Source: Antechinus flavipes (taxonomy: Eukaryota). Taken from it: a stretch of 64,000 bases of DNA. The stretch is taken from the NCBI RefSeq assembly GCF_016432865.1, contig NC_067399.1, positions 232,252,001-232,316,000 on the forward strand. The letters are read 5' to 3'. Made by a program: the position numbers and the translations under genes. Shown here piece by piece: positions 28,701-60,770 of this stretch. A model generated the notes under the pieces. It did no database searches. It saw only the letters and a list, made by a program, of their open reading frames with translations, and was not told the origin of the DNA. Positions within the stretch are counted from its first letter, which is position 1. Each line of letters starts with the position of its first letter.

Positions 28701-29235
28701 CTGTGTTTCCCCAATAATAAGACCTATCCCGAAAATAAGCCCTATTGAGATTGCTACTGTAGTGAAGGTGATCCCCTGCGCTACACGCTATATTACAGTA
28801 CCCTCTGTATGCACCGTCCCCCCCCCCTCCCCCCCCGAGGTGAAACGCACGCCACTCTCCGAGCTGCATCCAATCAGAGCTGCAGCAGTGAGCGCGTCAT
28901 CTTGTTCTTCCCCAGTGATTTGCTTGCTGGCGCCATTGAGAGCAGTGCTGCGGAGGAGAGCTGAGGCAGGACAGCATAAAAACCCAGTATGTAAGCGGGA
29001 GTGAGGGGGCATGATGGAGGATAAAAGAAGAACTCAGGGGGCATGATGGAGGATAAAAGGGGCATGATAGAGGATAAAAGAAGAACTCAGGGGGCATGAT
29101 GGAGGATAAAAGGGACACTCAGGGAGCATTGCTGTCAATGTTCATTAAAATAAGCCCTCCCCTGAAAATAAGCCCTCTGGTGTTTCTCTGTCCAAAAAAA
29201 TAATAAGACAGTGTTTTATTATCGGGGAAACACGG
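28701..29235. mobile_element. Non-autonomous Tc1/mariner-superfamily (Tc2/pogo-like) MITE, 535 bp
   Basis: 23-bp TIRs CTGTGTTTCCCCAATAATAAGAC / CCGTGTTTCCCCGATAATAAAAC (20/23 identical), TA TSDs at 28699-28700 and 29236-29237, and subterminal AAAATAAGCCCT repeats. Confidence 0.88.
29005..29111 (+). repeat. Four copies of GGGGCATGAT(G/A)GAGGATAAAA inside the MITE
   Basis: Read directly; two copies are followed by gaagaactca. Confidence 0.95.
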
Positions 29236-33139: not shown

Positions 33140-33600
33140 TGTGTTTGAGATGCTTGAAGGCTATCCAAGGAGAGACGTCCAGCAAGATGTGAGGCAGGAG
33201 GTCGTGATAGGCCGCATCCCCTCCCTTGGTCAGTTTCTTTACTACTTTTCCTCTCCCGCCTTTCCCAGCCCCGCCCCAGGCACGCGCACGCGCACATACT
33301 CTGGCCCTCACAGGCCACGGCCCCGCCCTCCTCCTCGAGAACGCGCCGACCCTCGCCAGCCCCGCCCCCCGCCCCGGGCGCGCGGTACTCACCAACCCCC
33401 CGGGCCAGAACGGAAGGGTGGGTGGGCCGAGTCACAGGCGACCTGGAGTCTCCGCCAGCACCGCGGACAGGTCCGACCCACCGTCCGCTCCACCCGCCCC
33501 TCTACGCCGGAAGTGACGCAACGCTGGCCATAGGCGCCTTGCACAGGCGCAGTGGAAATATCGACGTTGCGCGTTGTGGTCCTGGACTTCTGGCACAAAC
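33140..33600 (-). promoter_or_regulatory. TTPAL: TTPAL CpG-island promoter and probable non-coding first exon
   Basis: CpG-dense, with several CCCCGCCC boxes, NRF1-type GCGCACGCGC (33284-33293), ETS-CRE CCGGAAGTGACG (33507-33518) and a minus-strand donor TTG|GTGAGT (exon end 33393). Confidence 0.82.
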
Positions 33601-34755: not shown

Positions 34756-35066
34756 NNNNNNNNNNNNNNNNNNNNNNNNNNNNNNNNNNNNNNNNNNNNN
34801 NNNNNNNNNNNNNNNNNNNNNNNNNNNNNNNNNNNNNNNNNNNNNNNNNNNNNNNNNNNNNNNNNNNNNNNNNNNNNNNNNNNNNNNNNNNNNNNNNNNN
34901 NNNNNNNNNNNNNNNNNNNNNNNNNNNNNNNNNNNNNNNNNNNNNNNNNNNNNNNNNNNNNNNNNNNNNNNNNNNNNNNNNNNNNNNNNNNNNNNNNNNN
35001 NNNNNNNNNNNNNNNNNNNNNNNNNNNNNNNNNNNNNNNNNNNNNNNNNNNNNNNNNNNNNNNNNN
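34756..35066. other. Assembly gap (311 N)
   Basis: Run of N. Confidence 1.
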
Positions 35067-48206: not shown

Positions 48207-49570
48207 TGATCCTGTAAGTGTCTCTCCTGTTACAGCACCTGCAGAGGAACTTTCCCTCCCACTTCTGAGAGTGGAAGCCCCAGGAGACTTCTTAGGACAA
48301 GCCTGCTGATTCACCATCCCAGAATTCTCTGAAAAGAGAATGCGATGGCAGAAAAGAATTAGGGATTTCAGCCTGGATTTGAGGCTAATTTAGCCCTAGG
48401 ATGAGTCAGAATTCAAGAAGGAAACCGAATTTTTGTCCTCTATGATGAGGGGCTTAAAAGCATGGCAGGGAGAAATCATTGACTTTATTGCCCTGAGAAC
48501 TCCTTTGAATTGAGAGTAACCCTTGCCCTCTCAGTGGCTGAAGAGCCCACAACATGAACAAATCAAATCTATATTAACTTTCAAGGCTTTCCATCAACTA
48601 GCCTCATCTTACCTAAGACCATGACTTACTGTATCTGAATACACTTGGGCTCACCGCAAAGGGGACTGATTCCCAGCTCTGTACCATTGTTCAGGCTTTC
48701 CCCCCAATGGAAACATCTCCCCATTTGTCTCCACAAATCCCAAATCTTGTCTGTGAAGCCCCGATGAGCTACCCCCAATCCACAGTGAATCTTTTCCTTC
48801 TCTTGGATTCCTACTACATTTTTATTGTCTTGAATTGTTCTCTATTTGTTTTATGTCTTTGTTTCTTGTCTTCTCAGCCAGCCCCCCCCCCTTAAGGATA
48901 GGGGCTGTCTTCTTCGTCTGTGTTCCACACAGTGCTTGGCACAGAGCTTGGTCCAGCAGATGCTTCATAAAGTTTGTCAAATGATTGAACTATCACAAAT
49001 TCAGTCTCTGAGACTTTTTCAGCCTGGAGAGGAAATTTTCTTTTGAATAAAAGTTCTTGGGGATATTGGGACTGGGATGGCAGTGGGAGTAGGCAGAGAG
49101 AGTCCTGGCCTGGCCCATGCTCTCCCCAAAGGGCCCTGACTCTCAGGGTGTTTAGTCTCCACAGGGGAAGGCAGGGTGGATTCCTAACTGGTGGTTCTAG
49201 AAAGATCCCAAGAAGAAGAGATGGCAGCGGATCTGGGGCAGTCAGGAGAGGAGGAAACTGGTCGGGTGGGGAGAAAGTGTCAAGAAACAACTAGTCTCCC
49301 CCAAAGGTGACTTCCTAATCTCCCTCAATGTCCCCAAAATAGGAGGAGAAAGACTGCATGAAGGCACGTAAGTCGGCAGCTGGAGCCCCCAGTCTGAGCC
49401 CTGGCTCCTCATTGTGCCTTTACGGTCCCAGGGTAGGACCACTGTTGTCCTATTTCACCAAGAGTGCTAGGAGTTCTGAGGGGAGCTGGACCCTCTGGAG
49501 GCTGGGACAGGCGGAGCCAGGCTGGGGAGGAAAGTGTCTGGCTGACCTCTCCCAGCCCTCCAGCCCCCTG

Positions 49571-49713
49571 TTAGATGACCTCCTGCTTGGTGATGGTGGG
49601 CTGAGGGATGGCTGAAGGAGGCTTGACCACTGTGGCGATGGCTCCTGGCAGTAGCTTGTAGGGCTCAGGCCCCGAGCTGGCCGGCGGAGAAGGCTGTGGG
49701 GTCTCAGGAGTGG
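49571..49713 (-). CDS. HNF4A: Hepatocyte nuclear factor 4 alpha, exon 10, 143 bp to TAA
   Basis: ttccag|CCACT...; encodes [46 protein letters not shown]. Confidence 0.97.
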
Positions 49714-50482
49714 CTGGAAGGACAAGGAGACAAATACCACCCAGTGAGTCAGAGGGGGACCACCGCTGGGTCCCTGAGAGACAAAAGAAAGCGCACACAG
49801 GAGTACGCAGGAGGCAGCGAGGTGTAAAAGACCAAGATCTAGTCCTGCTTTGGGCACTGACTCGCCTACTCCCACCCCCTTGACCTGGGTCTCAGCTTCC
49901 TCAACTCTATGTTAAGGGCAAGGGACGAGACAGTCTCTGTGGTTCTTTCTACTTCTGACAGTCTATGTTCTATGCCCAAAGATTTTTCCAGCTCTAAAAT
50001 TTGAGATTCTCTCAGGACTCGTGGCTAAATGGGTTGGAACAGAAAGACAGTAAGTTCCTGACTGGAATCCTTTCCCTATATTCCAGGACGTCCCCTCTTT
50101 GCTCCCAACATCACTGTCTGTTCTTTCAGCCTGAGCAAGAGGGCCAGACTTCCTGTCCTGAACCAAAGCATACGGTCAGCATGTGGCACACGGCCTGGGA
50201 GAAACCGGCCCTTTTGGGGGGAAAGCAGCAAGTCTTTAAGCCACTACCTTGTGGCCTGGAATGCTAGGGAGGGCGTGTACCCTCCTTCTCTGAGAGGTCA
50301 GAGGCTGCGATCTTATTCTAGTCTTGGTTTTGAGAAATGGATCCCATGAGTGCAGAAAGATTCTCCTTTCCCACAAATCCAAATTTGCAGGGCCCTGCCT
50401 CCGACCCCAACCCAGGACCAAGCTTCTTGAGACCTCCCTCCCTTCTCCCTCCCTTTCCCCCAAAGAGCCCCAGGCTGCCCAC

Positions 50483-50635
50483 CTGTCCGCCACCCAGGAC
50501 GGGGCCACTCACACATCTGTCCATTGCTGATCTGGGCAGGCATGGTGTTGGCGACTATCACATTAGTGCCCATGTTTTCTGGCACCAAGTGAGGGTGCAA
50601 GGGGTGGTGAGTGTGGGGTGCTTCGCTGGAAGACC
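50483..50635 (-). CDS. HNF4A: HNF4A exon 9: long form 153 bp (alpha2-type) or short form 123 bp ending at 50513 (alpha1-type)
   Basis: ctcag|GGTCT; encodes [40 protein letters not shown]. Donors GT|gtgagt (50513) and CAG|gtgggc (50483) are 30 nt apart. Confidence 0.96.
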
Positions 50636-50887
50636 CTGAGGATGGAAACAGTAAAACTAAGAATAGCAGGTCACAAGAGCTGGATTACTGAGATGGAGCT
50701 TAATATCTGCCCTAATTGTCTTCTACTAGGATTCTAGAAATAAAAATGAGACTAGTCTCATTTAGCTAGACTAGTCTAGCTAAAGAAGCTTAAAGAGTAC
50801 TTTCACTCTCTGGTTTCTTTTCCCTCAGTTAAATGAGAGATTTGAATTAAATAATCCTTAAGATTTCTTCCAGACATAATATTCTAT

Positions 50888-51772
50888 GTTCTAAGGGCCC
50901 TCCCAGCTCGACCTCTTGGGTTCTAACGGCCCTCCCAGCTCTGACCTCCTGTGTTCTAATCTCCCTCCCAGCTCTGACCTTCTGGGTTCTAAGGGCCCTT
51001 CCAGCTCTGACCTCCTGGGTTCTAAGCTCCCTCCCAGCTCTCACTCCTGGGTTCTAAGGGCCCTCCCAGCTCTGACATTCTGTGTTCTAAGGGCCCACCC
51101 AGCTCTGACCTCCTATGTTCTAAAGGCCTTCCCAGCTCTGATGTTCTGTGGTCTAAGGGCCCTCCCAGCTCTGACCTCCTATGTTCTAAAGGCCTTCCCA
51201 GCTCTGACCTCCTGTGTTCTAAGGGCCCTCCCAGTTCTGACCTCCTGTGTTCTAAGGGCCCTCCCAGTTCTGACCTCCTGGGTTCTAAGCTCCCTCCCAG
51301 CTCTCACTCCTGGGTTCTAAGGGCCCTCCCAGCTCTGACTCCTGTGTTCTAAGCTCCCTCCCAGCTCTGACATTTCATGTTCTAAGCTTCCTCTCAGCTT
51401 TGACATTCTGTGTTCTAAGGGCCCTCCCAGCTCTGACCTGGGTTCTAAGCTCCCTCCCAGCTCTCACTCCTATGTTCTAAAGGCCTTCCCAGCTCTGACC
51501 TCCTGTGTTCTAAGGGCCCTCCCAGTTCTGACCTCCTGTGTTCTAAGGGCCCTCCCAGATCTGACATTCTGTGTTCTAAGGGCCCCCCCAGCTCTGACCT
51601 CCTGGGTTCTAAGCTCCCTCCCAGCTCTCACTCCTGGGTTCTAAGGGCCCTCCCAGCTCTGACTCCTGTGTTCTAAGCTCCCTCCCAGCTCTGACATTTC
51701 ATGTTCTAAGCTTCCTCTCAGCTTTGACATTCTGTGTTCTAAGGGCCCTCCCAGCTCTGACCTGTGCTCTAA
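50888..51772 (+). repeat. 33-bp minisatellite, about 27 units, in HNF4A intron 8
   Basis: Consensus GTTCTAAGGGCCCTCCCAGCTCTGACCTCCTGT; 28 (t)tctaa anchors at about 33-bp spacing. Confidence 0.97.
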
Positions 51773-51931
51773 CATCTGAATTCTAAATCTGCAAGCCCCC
51801 CAGTCCCACTTGGAGTGGGGACAGCTGGGGCCAGTGCCCTGCCCTTATGGATTGAATGAGGACCTCAAGAGCTAAGCCCCCCCCCCTCCACCCCAGGTGG
51901 TGGGTGAAGTCGGGAGACGACTGGCACAGAC

Positions 51932-52168
51932 CCCCCAGCAGCATCTCCTGCAGCAAGTTGTCGATCTTGGTCACACCAAAGAGTTTGATGAACTGTATCT
52001 GCTCGATCATCTGCCAGGTGATGCTCTGCAGGGTGGGCAGCAGCAGCAGCAGCTCCCCAAAGCGACCCCGGGAGTCGTACTGCCGGTCATTGATGTAGTC
52101 CTCCAGGCTCACCTGCACCTGTGACCGCATCCGCTTGATTTTACCAGGGTCGCTCAGCCCCTTGGCAT
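51932..52168 (-). CDS. HNF4A: HNF4A exon 8, 237 bp (end of ligand-binding domain, AF-2)
   Basis: acacag|ATGCC...GGGG|gtctgt; encodes [78 protein letters not shown]. Confidence 0.97.
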
Positions 52169-52289
52169 CTGTGTGGGCAAGGGAGGAAAGCAAGGGAGGT
52201 TTGGGGGGGAAAGAAGTCTGGGGCCGAGGGAAGCCCAGATGAGAGCGGGCCACAGGACAGAGACTGTCTGGTCCAGAATGCTCTCGGGA

Positions 52290-54040
52290 AATTATCGGCT
52301 TTAATCCCCGCCGTTTCCAAAGGCGGACCTTGAGGCCAGGCCAAACAGGCGCTGAGGCGGAGGCAGCGCTGGAAGCCGGGTCACTGGCTGCAAACCCAGC
52401 GCTTTCCCTTGGGCTCCCACCATTTTATAGATGAAATGACAGAGACCCAGGAAGACAATGTTATGCATGAGGCGAAAGCAGAGCCTCGATCAGAGCCCAG
52501 GCTGGGCCCTCCTCATTACCCCAGCGGGCGCCCTAGTCCCAGGTCCCGCGACCAACTCTCCTCAGTTTGCGCCCGCGGGTCCCTCCCTGCCCACCCGGGC
52601 ACCGGCCAGCGCTCCTCAGTCTGCGCCCGCGGGTCCCTCCCTGCCCACCCGGGCACCGGCCAGCGCTCCTCAGTCTGCGCCCGCGGGTCCCTCCCTGCCC
52701 ACCCGGGCACCGGCCAGCGCTCCTCAGTCTGCGCCCGCGGGTCCCTCCCTGCCCACCCGGGCACCGGCCAGCGCTCCTCAGTCTGCGCCCGCGGGTCCCT
52801 CCCTGCCCACCCGGGCACCGGCCAGCGCTCCTCAGTCTGCGCCCGCGGGTCCCTCCCTGCCCACCCGGGCACCGACCAGCGCTCCTCAGTCTGCGCCCGC
52901 GGGTCCCTCCCCGCCCACCAGGGCACCGGCCAGCGCTCCTCAGTCTGCGCCCGCGGGTCCCTCCCTGCCCACCCGGGCACCAACCAGCGCTCCTCACTCT
53001 GCGCCCGCGGACCCCGCCCCACCACCAGGGCACCGACCAGCGCTCCTCAGTCTGCGCCCGCGGGCCCCGCCCCACCACCAGGGCACCGGCCAGCGCTCCT
53101 CAGTCTGCGCCCGCGGGCCCCGCCCCACCACCAGGGCACCGACCAGCGCTCCTCAGTCTGCGCCCACGGGCCCCGCCCCGCCCACTCGGGAACCGGCCAG
53201 CGCTCCTCAGTGTGCGCCCACGGGCCCCGCCCCGCCCCGCCCACCCGGGAACCGACCAGCGCTCCTCAGTGTGCGCCCACGGGCCTTGCCCCACCACCAG
53301 GGCACCGACCAGCGCTCCTCAGTCTGCGCCCGCGGGTCCCTCCCCGCCCACCAGGGCACCGACCAGCGCTCCTCAGTCTGCGCCCGCGGGCCCCGCCCCA
53401 CCACCAGGGCACCGACCAGCGCTCCTCAGTGTGCGCCCGCGGGCCCCGCCCCACCACCAGGGCACCGACCAGCGCTCCTCAGTCTGCGCCCGCGGACCTC
53501 GCCCCACCACCAGGGCACCGACCAGCGCTCCTCAGTGTGCGCCCGCGGGCCCCGCCCCACCACCAGGGCACCGACCAGCGCTCCTCAGTCTGCGCCCGCG
53601 GACCTCGCCCCACCACCAGGGCACCGACCAGCGCTCCTCAGTCTGCGCCCACGGGCCTCGCCCCACCACCAGGGCACCGGCCAGCGCTCCTCAGTGTGCG
53701 CCCACGGGCCGGCCCTGCCTGTGCTGGGCAGAAGCAGGGGGAGAGGAGGCCGCCGCCTTCGGGAGGTCACTCAGGGCTGCCTGTCCCGGCCCGAGCCAAG
53801 TGGCCCGGAGCGAGGAGAGGGAACGGGCAGTTCCTGCGTTCTAGATACTCCAGTCCTACTGAGGGAAACAACAGGGGAACTGCAAACTGGGATAACCTGG
53901 GGACGGGGGAGGGCGCAAGGATCAACACACTGATACCTAAAGGCCTTCGCAGCCTGTTATCTTCGAAAAAGTATAGCATGGGGGCCGCTAGGAGGCGCAG
54001 TGGGTGGACCCAGCCCGGAGTCAGGAGGAGCTGAGTTCCA
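52290..54040. promoter_or_regulatory. Intragenic CpG island spanning the minisatellite and its non-repetitive flanks
   Basis: 6 CpG per 54-bp unit. The flanks 52290-52400 and 53700-53830 are also CpG-rich, unlike the rest of the gene. Confidence 0.7.
52553..53710 (+). repeat. GC/CpG-rich 53-54-bp minisatellite, 21 full units plus 1 degenerate unit, in HNF4A intron 7
   Basis: Unit GGGCACCGGCCAGCGCTCCTCAGTCTGCGCCCGCGGGTCCCTCCCTGCCCACCC. CAGCGCTCCTCA recurs at 52607, 52661, 52715...53682. Confidence 0.98.
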
Positions 54041-54130
54041 ATCCCACCTCAGACATTTAACACTTCCTGGCTGTGTGACCTTGGGCAAGTCACTTAACCC
54101 CAAATGCCTCAGGGAAAAACAAATAAACAA
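53981..54130 (+). mobile_element. WSINE1-like SINE
   Basis: ggggccgctaggaggcgcagtgg head, core and A tail; imperfect TSD at 53966-53980 and 54131-54145. Confidence 0.8.
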
Positions 54131-55213
54131 AAAGAGTGTAGCATGCTGGAAAGACTTTTGGAGTCTGAGGACCTCAATTTCACCTCAGTTTCCTCAGCTG
54201 TAAAACAGGGAGAGTTAGATTGGACAGCCAGGTCTAGCCGAGCCCAGTGGGGAACCTATGACTCCGTCATATGATTGTCTTGTGGTCCATCGAGGGGGGC
54301 CAAGCCTGCAGCCCCGGGCCTTGGGGGAGACCTGACTTCCCTGGGCTATCCAGCTGCTTCCTAGGAAGACGGGTCCCAGGATGGAACATCTGGGAATGAG
54401 AGCCCCTCAGGCTACAGCTGATGAGATTGTGAAGAGGGGACCCCAAAACTTTGAAAATCCTTGAAGGAGAGAATCAACTCTGCCTCAATAAGAGACCCTG
54501 CCCCAAGTCCTTTTTTTTTCTCTTAAATGAATTTTGAGGCTTGAGGGGGAATGGAGCAGGTTGTGGTCCCTTAAAAAAACTAGTCCTTTCAGATTGATTT
54601 ATTCCTTTCTGATTGAGATTACTCCCAGCCCCTCCTTTGATTCACAAATCCTGGTCAAAAGGATCCCTTTGAATTCCAAAAGGAGATCCAGCTTGTTCTA
54701 GTCCCAGCCGGATCTGAGCCAATCTGGGACTCCACCCATGAACCCCCTATTATAAAAGAGCCAAACTAAAACCCTCTCTTTGCAGAGGTTCCAAACATGC
54801 CAGCTCCATGCTTGGCACCCCAAGGGCCTCTGCCCATTGGAATACAGTTTCCAGTGCCCCTTCTCTTTACCCTCACCTATTTCCTTAACTAGACTTTAAA
54901 ACCTTACTTCCAATCCCCATAACAAACCTCTTTTATCAATCTAGGTTTTCAGGCCTCTAAATTCCTTTACAGAGAACTTCTGTGCCACCAGAAGGGAGTT
55001 CCCAAAACTCCCTACCCTTGCGCCGAATCCTGAGGGGGTGCAGGGGAGCCAAACCCCTCCATCTGGTTTCCTGAACCCCAAATATGCCACTAGACCTCAT
55101 TTAACTCCCTGACCACTAGAAACCCTAATTTCATTTGGGTATCTCAAACCTAAACCTCATCAACTGGATCCCACCAAGCCAGAGAACTGGGGGCTCTGCT
55201 TGATTTCCAGTAC

Positions 55214-55369
55214 CTGGGTCAAAGAAGATGATGGCCTTCAGACAGGCGTATTCATTGTCATCGATCTGGAGTTCCTGGAAGGGCTGCACCAGCTCGTCCA
55301 GAATGCGGACCGCCACACGGCTCATTTCCACCAGTTCGGGGCAGTGTCGTGGGACGATGTAATCATTGC
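55214..55369 (-). CDS. HNF4A: HNF4A exon 7, 156 bp
   Basis: gttcag|GCAAT...CCAG|gtactg; encodes [51 protein letters not shown]. Confidence 0.97.
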
Positions 55370-55429
55370 CTGAACGCATGGGGGAGAAGCCACAGGAGTC
55401 CAGTCAGTTCAGTGAACATCCGCAGTACT

Positions 55430-55810
55430 AACGTGCATACGCACACACAGTGCACATGCATTAATTGTGCTCACCTGCATACACACGTGTGCACCGTGCA
55501 CATAACACACAATGCACACACATCATTCATGTCTTTCATGCATCTATACAGCACATCTGTGCACATAACTGGACCGAATATACACATGTGCACCACACAA
55601 TCATATCCATATGCGTACACACCTGTGCATGCCTATACTCAATGTACACGCATATACATCTATGTATGTGAGTGCATGCATGCACATTAAGTGTATACAT
55701 ACATGTGCATATATAACACATACATATGCATGGATACGTATACATGGCAAGCATTGAAAATAACACGTTCCCATTCTAATAACAATAGCTGGTACACACA
55801 CATATACATA
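55430..55810. repeat. Degenerate (CA/TA/TG)n purine-pyrimidine low-complexity tract
   Basis: Read directly from the sequence. Confidence 0.9.
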
Positions 55811-56338
55811 AATAGTGCTCTGTAGTGGCAGAATTGTTTTTTCGACATAACCTTTTATGATCCTCCCAACAGCCCACGAGGCTAGCAGGGCAGGAAACAT
55901 GTGGTCATCCATCCATTTAAAGTCCTTAGAAAGAACCTAAGAGATCTTGTCCAGCCTGCTTATTTTGTAGACACTAGGAATCAGAAAGGCAAGAGGAGTG
56001 ACTGGCAGACTCAGACCTCCTGACACCAAACCCAGTGCTCTTTCCACTCTACTGAACAGACTCACTTATTTCCATTTTGCAAATAGGAAACTGAGGTAGA
56101 TGCTGAGTCCATGGCTCTATTGTACGATGCCCTAAAAAGTTATATCTAAAGAAAGGTCTTTTCAATAGACCAAAGTCATGGATTTGATACTTTGGAGGAA
56201 GGAAAGACTCTGCTAAGAGATTCAAGATTCTCTACTTTTCATTCCTCAATAACTCTTCCCCATTCAAAGCAGAAAACACATGTCACACCCTTTGCCCCAT
56301 GGCCCTAGTTTGGAGTTCCCTTCCAGGTCAGTTGGTCA

Positions 56339-59906: not shown

Positions 59907-60048
59907 TGTTTGTTTGTTTGCTGAGGCAATTAGGATTAAGTGACTTGCCCAGGGTCACACAGCCAGGAAGTGTTAAGTGTCACATTTGAACTCAGGTCCT
60001 CCTGATTTCAGGGCTGCTGCTCTACCCACTGCGCCACCTAATTGCCCC
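59907..60048 (-). mobile_element. WSINE1-like SINE with 16-bp TSD
   Basis: TSD aaa(t/c)ctgttcattttt at 59891-59906 and 60049-60064. Confidence 0.85.
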
Positions 60049-60770
60049 AAACCTGTTCATTTTTCAAGGAAGGAAAAGGCTGCTCAGAAAGAAATGATTT
60101 ATCCAAGATCACTAAGATAACATGGCAGAACTGATTAAAGAACCCAGGTCCTCCCAATTTCAAGCCCACTGTTCATCCTTTCTATTAAGCTACATTAATT
60201 TTGGGTAAGAATTTTTTTTAATGTGAAAAGATGTATTTATATCCTACAAAAGGTACATTTCTGTACTATAAGAAATATCATCATGCCGCAATAAGAAAAT
60301 GAGAGGCAAGGCCAAACATGCGGTCCTTATCCCTACCCAGACAGTCCTGCCTCCTCCCCAAACGATTCTTCTGAATGATTATTGGAGGCAAAACCCTGTT
60401 CTACAGAGTCAGTGGGGCTGATGCAGAGGCTATTACTCATTATAATGAGCTCTCAGAAGAGGGGAAGAAGAGGAAGTTGGAGGCCACAAAACTGCCAGTC
60501 TTGGTGGGGATGGGTCTGTTTACTCTCTGCTAGAGCTTAAGAGCTGGGGGTACCCAGCCCTGACTGATTGGAATAAGAAAATCCCAGGAGATGCCACAAG
60601 ACCTAACTAATTAGTCCCTCTGCTCTTCTAGCTCTACCAGAACTAGTTGTGTGATTCTGACTAAATCACTCCCTTTCTTTGGGTCTTTTTTTTTTTTTAG
60701 AGAGAGATGAACTGCATGAGGTCCTTGATGTTCATGCACCCTTTGTTTTGCGATTTTTCACTAACATTCA

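What the first reader, a model, noticed from the sequence alone, without database searches (positions are those of the whole stretch)
52581..52974. Phased tandem array of perfect G-quadruplex motifs on the HNF4A sense strand
The minus strand carries GGGTGGGCAGGGAGGG (four G3 tracts, 1:2:1 loops, the loop pattern of the well-studied MYC promoter G4). There are seven perfect copies at plus-strand 52581, 52635, 52689, 52743, 52797, 52851 and 52959, a variant at 52905, and an exact 54-bp period. They lie on the non-template strand and in the pre-mRNA about 410 nt upstream of exon 8. That arrangement favours G4/R-loop formation, Pol II pausing, altered splicing and repeat instability. Later 53-bp units lose the perfect motif, so the homogeneous G4 units look like the newest expansion. 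This is the best candidate in the window for an undescribed regulatory element.
Basis: partly seen in the sequence, partly recalled or inferred. Interest (0 to 1): 0.7.

Follow-up and report, generated by a model that had tools for sequence, protein, structure and literature searches.

The report
G-quadruplex-rich minisatellite in marsupial HNF4A intron
A real 1.2-kb tandem repeat inside an intron of a marsupial HNF4A gene carries a very strong four-stranded-DNA (G-quadruplex) motif in a third of its units, but this is a known kind of GC-rich minisatellite and nothing here shows that it regulates the gene.

Summary
Seven perfect GGGTGGGCAGGGAGGG motifs lie on the minus strand at the stated coordinates, 54 bp apart. 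They sit in a 21.6-unit, 53/54-bp minisatellite at 52549-53710, in intron 7 of a non-human, marsupial HNF4A gene read on the minus strand. The nearest motif is 412 nt upstream of exon 8.

The seven copies are one motif multiplied by tandem duplication, not seven independent events. A random unit of this composition (51% G on the sense strand) gives a canonical G4 motif in 22-26% of shuffles, and loops of 2 nt or less in about 2%.

Folding with a G4 energy term predicts a G4 at all seven motifs; the competing hairpins are unremarkable.

The array is CpG-island-like (CpG o/e 0.80 against 0.22-0.24 in the flanks). It is strongly GC-skewed and carries nine Sp1-type GC boxes but no CTCF consensus.

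The closest known cases are the human CEB1/CEB25 G4 minisatellites and the G4-forming VNTR6-1 in TERT intron 6. Verdict: a new member of a known kind; regulatory function unproven.

The parts
52549..53710 (-). Whole minisatellite: 21.6 units of 53/54 bp. GC 78%; the sense (minus) strand is 51.5% G; CpG o/e 0.80.
   Evidence: TRF; unit parsing; composition
52549..52984 (-). 54-bp block: one partial unit and seven full units. Units 1-4 are identical, units 5 and 7 differ by 1-2 bases, and unit 6 is an intermediate form. This block holds the seven perfect GGGTGGGCAGGGAGGG motifs.
52985..53710 (-). Type B and mixed block: 14 units, mostly 53 bp. It holds Sp1-type GGGGCGGGG boxes, three further canonical PQS (53163, 53230, 53329) and an exactly duplicated 106-bp dimer (53417-53522 = 53523-53628).
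52581..52596 (-). The perfect G4 motif nearest to exon 8, 412 nt upstream of the 3' splice site. The other six start at 52635, 52689, 52743, 52797, 52851 and 52959.
52896..52916 (-). Variant unit 6: still a canonical PQS, but with a 6-nt third loop.
51932..52168 (-). HNF4A exon encoding [17 protein letters not shown]...LLQEMLLGG. It is exon 8 in the usual human numbering (from memory). Acceptor cag|AT, donor GG|gtctgt.
   Evidence: Pfam PF00104 and the HNF4-alpha names of hits
55214..55369 (-). Upstream HNF4A exon (exon 7). Intron 7 is 52169-55213 (3045 nt), of which the array fills 38%.

Best explanation
This is an ordinary GC-rich, strand-asymmetric intronic minisatellite, probably a VNTR. 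It arose and is kept homogeneous by replication slippage, unequal exchange or gene conversion within intron 7 of a marsupial HNF4A gene. Because the sense strand is about 51% G, its units hold G-tract clusters. One unit variant (type A) acquired four G3 tracts with 1:2:1 loops, and that variant was then amplified into an eight-unit block next to the exon-8 side of the array. As single-stranded DNA or as pre-mRNA the motif very probably folds into a stable parallel G4 (predicted, not measured). The most likely real consequence is on the array itself. Short-loop G4s make minisatellites unstable during replication, as in CEB1 and CEB25, which would explain the very homogeneous type A block. Any effect on HNF4A transcription or splicing is possible but is a by-product, unproven, and probably small.
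For: Shown: a tandem array with 14 distinct unit variants among 20 full units, and blocks of identical units. The unit occurs nowhere else in the window, in no JGI metagenome contig and in no predicted protein in the size range searched. The array composition is C 51.5%/G 26.6% on the plus strand, and a PQS is expected in 22-26% of such units. All seven motifs, plus three others, come out as G4 in the minimum-free-energy fold of the whole array when a G4 term is allowed (-910.8 against -727.1 kcal/mol; one unit -43.1 against -19.3). DNA hairpin folding of three units is no better than shuffles (z = -0.44). Intermediate units 6 and 14 link type B to type A. From the literature: G4 minisatellites with short loops are the unstable ones (PMC5491262; PMC2673046 and PMC3486850). 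An earlier unchecked note of this scan reports another run of about 37 G4 units on a non-template strand in this genome, so such arrays may not be rare here.
Against: The array stands out from its flanks in CpG content (o/e 0.80 against 0.22-0.24) and in GC skew. That could mean protection from germline methylation and hence a function, rather than mere youth. All-short loops occur in only about 2% of composition-matched units. A precedent exists for an intronic sense-strand G4 VNTR that changes splicing from 3.5 kb away (PMC11830802). Neither copy-number polymorphism nor absence from other marsupials could be checked here.
Confidence: 0.6

Rival explanations
1. A functional co-transcriptional element. 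During HNF4A transcription the G-rich non-template strand forms G4s that stabilise an R-loop, or the pre-mRNA forms RNA G4s. This slows Pol II or recruits G4-binding proteins, and so tunes use of exon 8 or of its donor (an alpha3-type read-through), as VNTR6-1 does in TERT.
For: The strand, the intron position and the predicted G4s fit. The sense strand is 51.5% G over 1.16 kb with GC skew about 0.32, which fits known R-loop-prone sequence by my own knowledge of the SkewR and QmRLFS criteria. TERT VNTR6-1 is a precedent (PMC11830802). G4s are preferentially on the non-template strand near splice sites (PMC9065059).
Against: The array is 412 nt or more from the 3' splice site and about 1500 nt from the 5' splice site, outside the 100-nt enrichment zone. 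No RNA run holds the stretch and no read evidence was obtained. RNA G4s are reported to be largely unfolded in eukaryotic cells (Guo and Bartel 2016, from memory). A single locus gives no statistical support, and conservation is unknown.
Confidence: 0.15
2. An intragenic CpG island that acts as a binding platform for Sp/KLF-type factors, as an enhancer or a cryptic or alternative promoter. The G4 motif would be incidental.
For: It passes CpG-island criteria over about 1.8 kb (500-bp windows starting at 52201-53501, so 52201-54000), amid CpG-poor flanks. Nine exact GGGGCGGGG boxes lie in the type B units, and CACCC-type boxes lie in type A units (read directly).
Against: GC boxes are expected in any GC-rich repeat. 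There is no transcript or chromatin evidence. Several unit variants are CpG-to-CpA changes that have been propagated (CGCGGG to CACGGG in units 11-13, 20 and 21), which argues that the array is not fully protected from methylation decay.
Confidence: 0.1
3. A cluster of intronic G-runs read in unfolded form by hnRNP H/F-type proteins, acting as an intronic splicing enhancer or silencer rather than as a G4.
For: There are more than 100 G3+ runs on the sense strand of the array. G-triplets are classic intronic splicing enhancers (my own knowledge).
Against: Such G-runs act mostly within about 100 nt of splice sites, and this array is farther away. There are no data.
Confidence: 0.07
4. An assembly artefact: a mis-assembled, over-expanded or collapsed repeat.
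For: Four identical 54-bp units in a row are hard to assemble.
Against: Eight runs of three studies and four organism labels hold part of the 2-kb stretch. Which part is unknown, and the best holder may be the source sample. The array has an orderly internal structure with 14 unit variants and clean unique flanks.
Confidence: 0.03

Closest known systems
Human minisatellites CEB1 and CEB25 (G4-forming, Pif1-sensitive)
   Same: A GC-rich, strand-asymmetric tandem array of units of a few tens of bp, each with a G4 motif. The CEB25 variant with short loops and the CEB1 forms with 0/1-nt loops are the unstable ones (PMC2673046, PMC3486850, PMC5491262). Here the loops are 1:2:1.
   Different: Those are human subtelomeric loci with measured hypervariability and solved G4 structures. 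This array is intronic in a marsupial liver transcription-factor gene. Only a third of its units hold the tight motif, and neither variability nor folding has been measured.
TERT intron 6 VNTR6-1 (38-bp unit, 24-66.5 copies)
   Same: An intronic VNTR whose units give G4s in the sense orientation of the host gene, upstream of alternatively used exons (PMC11830802).
   Different: For TERT there are population copy-number data, G4-seq/G4-ChIP-seq support, CRISPR deletion and G4-ligand effects on isoform ratio. Here there are none. The sequences are unrelated, and the distance to the exon is 0.4-1.5 kb instead of 3.5 kb.
MYC promoter NHE III1 G4 (Pu22/Pu27)
   Same: Four G3 tracts with a 1:2:1 loop arrangement, which predicts a parallel and very stable G4 (my own knowledge).
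   Different: That is a single promoter element on the non-coding strand upstream of a transcription start, not a tandem intronic array. There is no sequence homology beyond the G-tracts.
HNF4A 5'UTR RNA G4 (human P1 transcript)
   Same: The same gene family member, and a parallel G4 with a regulatory claim (translational repression; reviewed in PMC7734589).
   Different: That one is in the 5'UTR of the mature mRNA. This one is intronic and is removed by splicing. They are unrelated elements.

Membership tests
Minisatellite / VNTR | Head-to-tail tandem units of about 10-100 bp forming an array of 0.5 kb or more | tested here: met
   TRF: period 53/54, 21.6 copies, 1162 bp, 92% matches
Minisatellite / VNTR | GC-rich with purine/pyrimidine or G/C strand asymmetry | tested here: met
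   GC 78%; C 51.5% against G 26.6% on the plus strand
Minisatellite / VNTR | Copy number varies between individuals | not testable with these tools
The runs found are about 1x short-read contigs.
Canonical G-quadruplex motif (PQS) | G3+ N1-7 G3+ N1-7 G3+ N1-7 G3+ on one strand | tested here: met
   11 non-overlapping PQS in the array, all on the minus strand, out of 17 on the minus strand and 3 on the plus strand in 64 kb
Canonical G-quadruplex motif (PQS) | G4Hunter score (25-nt window) of 1.2 or more | tested here: met
   1.40 in type A units, 1.48 in the intermediate units 6 and 14, 1.12-2.16 in units 8-20, 0.48 in the last degenerate unit
Canonical G-quadruplex motif (PQS) | Folds into a G4 in K+ (CD, NMR, polymerase stop) | not testable with these tools
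   Energy-model prediction only: ViennaRNA with the G4 term predicts a G4 at all seven motifs
G4-driven unstable minisatellite (CEB1/CEB25 type) | G4 with short loops (3 nt or less, preferably pyrimidine) | tested here: met
   The loops are T, CA and A, a total of 4 nt. The criterion is from PMC5491262. Only one loop is purely pyrimidine.
G4-driven unstable minisatellite (CEB1/CEB25 type) | Instability that depends on the G4 motif, on Pif1 or on G4 ligands | not testable with these tools
   Indirect hint only: the G4-bearing block is the most homogeneous part, with 4 identical units
Splicing-active intronic G4 VNTR (TERT VNTR6-1 type) | Intronic, with G4s in the sense orientation of the host gene | tested here: met
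   Intron 7 of HNF4A, with the motifs on the coding (minus) strand
Splicing-active intronic G4 VNTR (TERT VNTR6-1 type) | Array length or G4 stabilisation changes the isoform ratio | not testable with these tools
   No RNA run holds the stretch and no reads were laid
Splice-site-proximal G4 | G4 within about 100 nt of a splice site (PMC9065059) | tested here: not met
   The nearest motif is 412 nt from the 3' splice site of exon 8. The array's far end is 1503 nt from the 5' splice site of exon 7.
CpG island | At least 500 bp, GC at least 55%, CpG o/e at least 0.6 | tested here: met
   Qualifying 500-bp windows start at 52201-53501. Array CpG o/e is 0.80 against 0.22-0.24 in the flanks.
CpG island | Unmethylated in germline or tissues | not testable with these tools
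   No methylation data
CTCF-site minisatellite (seen elsewhere in this genome by earlier notes) | CTCF core consensus CCASYAGRKGGCRSY in the units | tested here: not met
   No match with 2 mismatches or fewer inside 52549-53710

The most novel reading that the evidence does not exclude
The array is a lineage-specific, copy-number-variable G4/R-loop element. By slowing Pol II in intron 7 it would set HNF4A output, or the choice between normal splicing of exon 8 and read-through of its donor (an alpha3-like C-terminus). That would be a heritable length-dependent dial on a master regulator of liver metabolism in a marsupial.
Probability: 0.08. Interest if true: 0.6.

Novelty: new member of a known kind. 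Interest (0 to 1): 0.25.

Why it matters
HNF4A is a master regulator of liver, gut and pancreatic gene expression. A length-variable structure-forming repeat inside it could in principle make its dosage or isoform mix heritable and variable, as shown for TERT. As it stands, the locus is mainly a clean natural example of a short-loop G4 minisatellite in a transcribed gene of a marsupial. It is useful for comparative work on G4-driven repeat instability, but it gives no evidence of regulation.

Tried and rejected
**Reads**
The Rfam scan and the local flank BLAST both stopped at 54050.
- There is therefore no read evidence on copy number, on assembly correctness, or on presence in organisms B-D.

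**Cross-species test**
- The exon-8 ORF was searched by reference. The one marsupial hit was Gracilinanus agilis, P0001, on a 4968-nt contig.
The tool was not tried again.

**Handling of other hits**
- Several hits are placental-type (KRLRSQ/GMAKIDN). P0004 has the C-terminus I recall for human HNF4-alpha3 and may be human.
- I did nothing further with any of them.
Exons were used one by one, by reference.

**Searches for the unit elsewhere**
- 0 of the JGI metagenome contigs hold the unit core.
- No predicted protein of 58-185 aa resembles the array's translation.
- There is no other copy in the window and no look-alike in the scan's notes.
- All of these are weak negatives.

**Other readings tested**
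- CTCF-array reading: rejected.
- Known RNA family: none in 49000-54050.
- Coding reading: the 425-541 aa plus-strand ORFs are a mechanical result of stop-free repeats and have no relatives.
- Literature: no paper was found on a VNTR or G4 in an HNF4A intron.

Full report
**1. What is there**

Reading 52200-54000 and running Tandem Repeats Finder show a single tandem array at 52549-53710. It has a period of 53/54 bp, 21.6 copies and 92% matches. The 16-mer GGGTGGGCAGGGAGGG occurs exactly seven times in the window. All seven are on the minus strand, at 52581, 52635, 52689, 52743, 52797, 52851 and 52959. Spacing is 54 bp, with one variant unit at 52905 between the last two.

Parsing the array on an invariant anchor gives 21 units after a partial first one.
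- Units 1-7 are 54 bp. Units 1-4 are identical; units 5 and 7 differ by 1-2 bases (type A).
- Unit 6 is an intermediate form that recurs as unit 14.
- Units 8-21 are mostly 53 bp (type B) and lack the perfect motif.
- Units 16+17 are exactly repeated as units 18+19, so recent exact duplication is not limited to the motif-bearing block.

**2. Gene context**

Minus-strand ORFs contain the HNF4A ligand-binding-domain exons. The exon encoding [17 protein letters not shown]...LLQEMLLGG runs 52168 down to 51932, with a cag|AT acceptor and a GG|gt donor. The preceding exon is 55369 down to 55214.

Intron 7 is therefore 52169-55213, which is 3045 nt. The array fills 38% of it. The nearest motif ends 412 nt upstream of the 3' splice site.

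A word search with the exon-8 ORF returns HNF4-alpha proteins (Pfam PF00104). The best hit, and the only one of the 14 hits whose sequences I read that shares the KRMRSQ and GVTKIDN residues, is from the marsupial Gracilinanus agilis. Earlier, unchecked notes of this scan name the genome as Antechinus flavipes. The window is not human.

**3. Is it more than chance?**

The window-shuffle null (0 expected) is not the right one, because a tandem array multiplies whatever its unit holds. The array is 51.5% C and 26.6% G on the plus strand. Shuffled units of the same composition, placed in tandem, give these rates:
- a canonical G3+N1-7 motif on the G-rich strand in 22-26% of trials;
- a motif with all loops of 2 nt or less in about 2% of trials.

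So a G4 motif in such a unit is unremarkable. The very tight loops are moderately unusual, and they count as a single event.

The later units have not lost G4 potential either. Four more canonical motifs lie at 52896, 53163, 53230 and 53329. G4Hunter scores of type B units are mostly 1.3-1.8, up to 2.16, against 1.40 for type A, so most are equal or higher.

**4. Does it fold?**

This is prediction only. With ViennaRNA's G4 term, one unit folds at -43.1 kcal/mol with the G4, against -19.3 without it. For the whole array the minimum-free-energy structure contains ten G4s, including all seven perfect motifs (-910.8 against -727.1 kcal/mol).

As single-stranded DNA without a G4 term, three units fold no better than dinucleotide shuffles (z = -0.44). 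The competing hairpins are 3-5 bp.

Four G3 tracts with 1:2:1 loops is the arrangement of the major MYC promoter G4 and is expected to be parallel and very stable (my own knowledge).

**5. Other properties**

- The array meets CpG-island criteria. Its CpG o/e is 0.80, while both flanks are at 0.22-0.24.
- GC skew towards G on the sense strand is about 0.32.
- Type B units carry nine exact GGGGCGGGG (Sp1-type) boxes.
- No CTCF consensus lies in the array at 2 mismatches or fewer, unlike minisatellites noted elsewhere in this genome.
- No Rfam family matches 49000-54050.
- The unit occurs nowhere else in the window, in no JGI metagenome contig and in no predicted protein in the size range tested.
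- The long plus-strand ORFs through the array are a mechanical result of stop-free repeats.

**6. What could not be done**

- The look-up of sequencing runs found eight low-coverage runs, held as contigs, under four organism labels. None is on record as RNA.
- Copy-number variation, assembly correctness, expression and conservation therefore remain untested.
- Some hits are placental-type, and one (P0004) may be human. Nothing further was done with them.

**7. Interpretation**

The best-supported reading, at about 0.6, is an ordinary GC-rich, strand-asymmetric intronic minisatellite. One unit variant acquired a short-loop G4 motif and was amplified at the end of the array nearest exon 8.

Work on CEB1 and CEB25 shows that minisatellites with short-loop, thermally stable G4s are the ones that become unstable (PMC2673046, PMC3486850, PMC5491262). 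This offers a mechanism for the homogeneity of the type A block, but that link is an inference.

It has a real precedent in TERT intron 6 VNTR6-1 (PMC11830802). Here it rests on position and composition only. The array also lies outside the roughly 100-nt splice-site zone where G4s are enriched (PMC9065059).

The remaining readings are an intragenic CpG island acting as an Sp/KLF platform, an unfolded G-run cluster read by hnRNP H/F, and an assembly artefact. All three are less likely.

**8. Novelty**

G4-forming minisatellites and an intronic, sense-strand G4 VNTR that affects splicing are already described. The known HNF4A G4 is in the 5'UTR (PMC7734589). No paper on an HNF4A intronic repeat was found.

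This is a new member of a known kind and of modest interest unless conservation or copy-number effects are shown.

Noticed in passing
window 50887-51763: A second minisatellite: 33-bp unit, 26.9 copies, 83% matches, with a 324-bp higher-order period. It lies in the next intron (intron 8), so exon 8 is flanked by two tandem arrays. Both are C-rich on the plus strand, that is G-rich on the sense strand. No canonical PQS was found in it.
   Followed up: partly
window 51783-51931 (minus strand): The exon-8 reading frame stays open past the donor for about 49 codons ([12 protein letters not shown]...). Placental hits show a similar read-through tail (PCQAQEG...), which recalls the alpha3-type C-terminus of HNF4A. 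An alternative isoform made by donor read-through may exist in this marsupial too.
   Followed up: no
window 33255-33375: A cluster of GC boxes and two canonical PQS on the minus strand (GGGGCGGGG three times), in a locally GC-richer stretch about 16 kb downstream of the HNF4A 3' end. It may be a CpG-island promoter of a neighbouring transcript. An assembly gap or mask of 311 N follows at 34756-35066.
   Followed up: no
window 29006-29129: A small tandem duplication (53-bp unit x 2.1, 98% matches, overlapping a 32-bp period) downstream of HNF4A.
   Followed up: no
window 53949-54042 and 59984-60083: About 100 bp just beyond the array's exon-7-side flank matches an inverted copy 6 kb away at 75% identity. 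It is probably an old dispersed repeat (SINE-like). The opposite flank (about 52410-52500) looks MIR-like from memory, but it has no second copy in the window.
   Followed up: partly
window 55400-55900: ORF translations rich in C, H, T, V and Y point to an imperfect TG/CA-rich low-complexity stretch in the intron upstream of exon 7.
   Followed up: no
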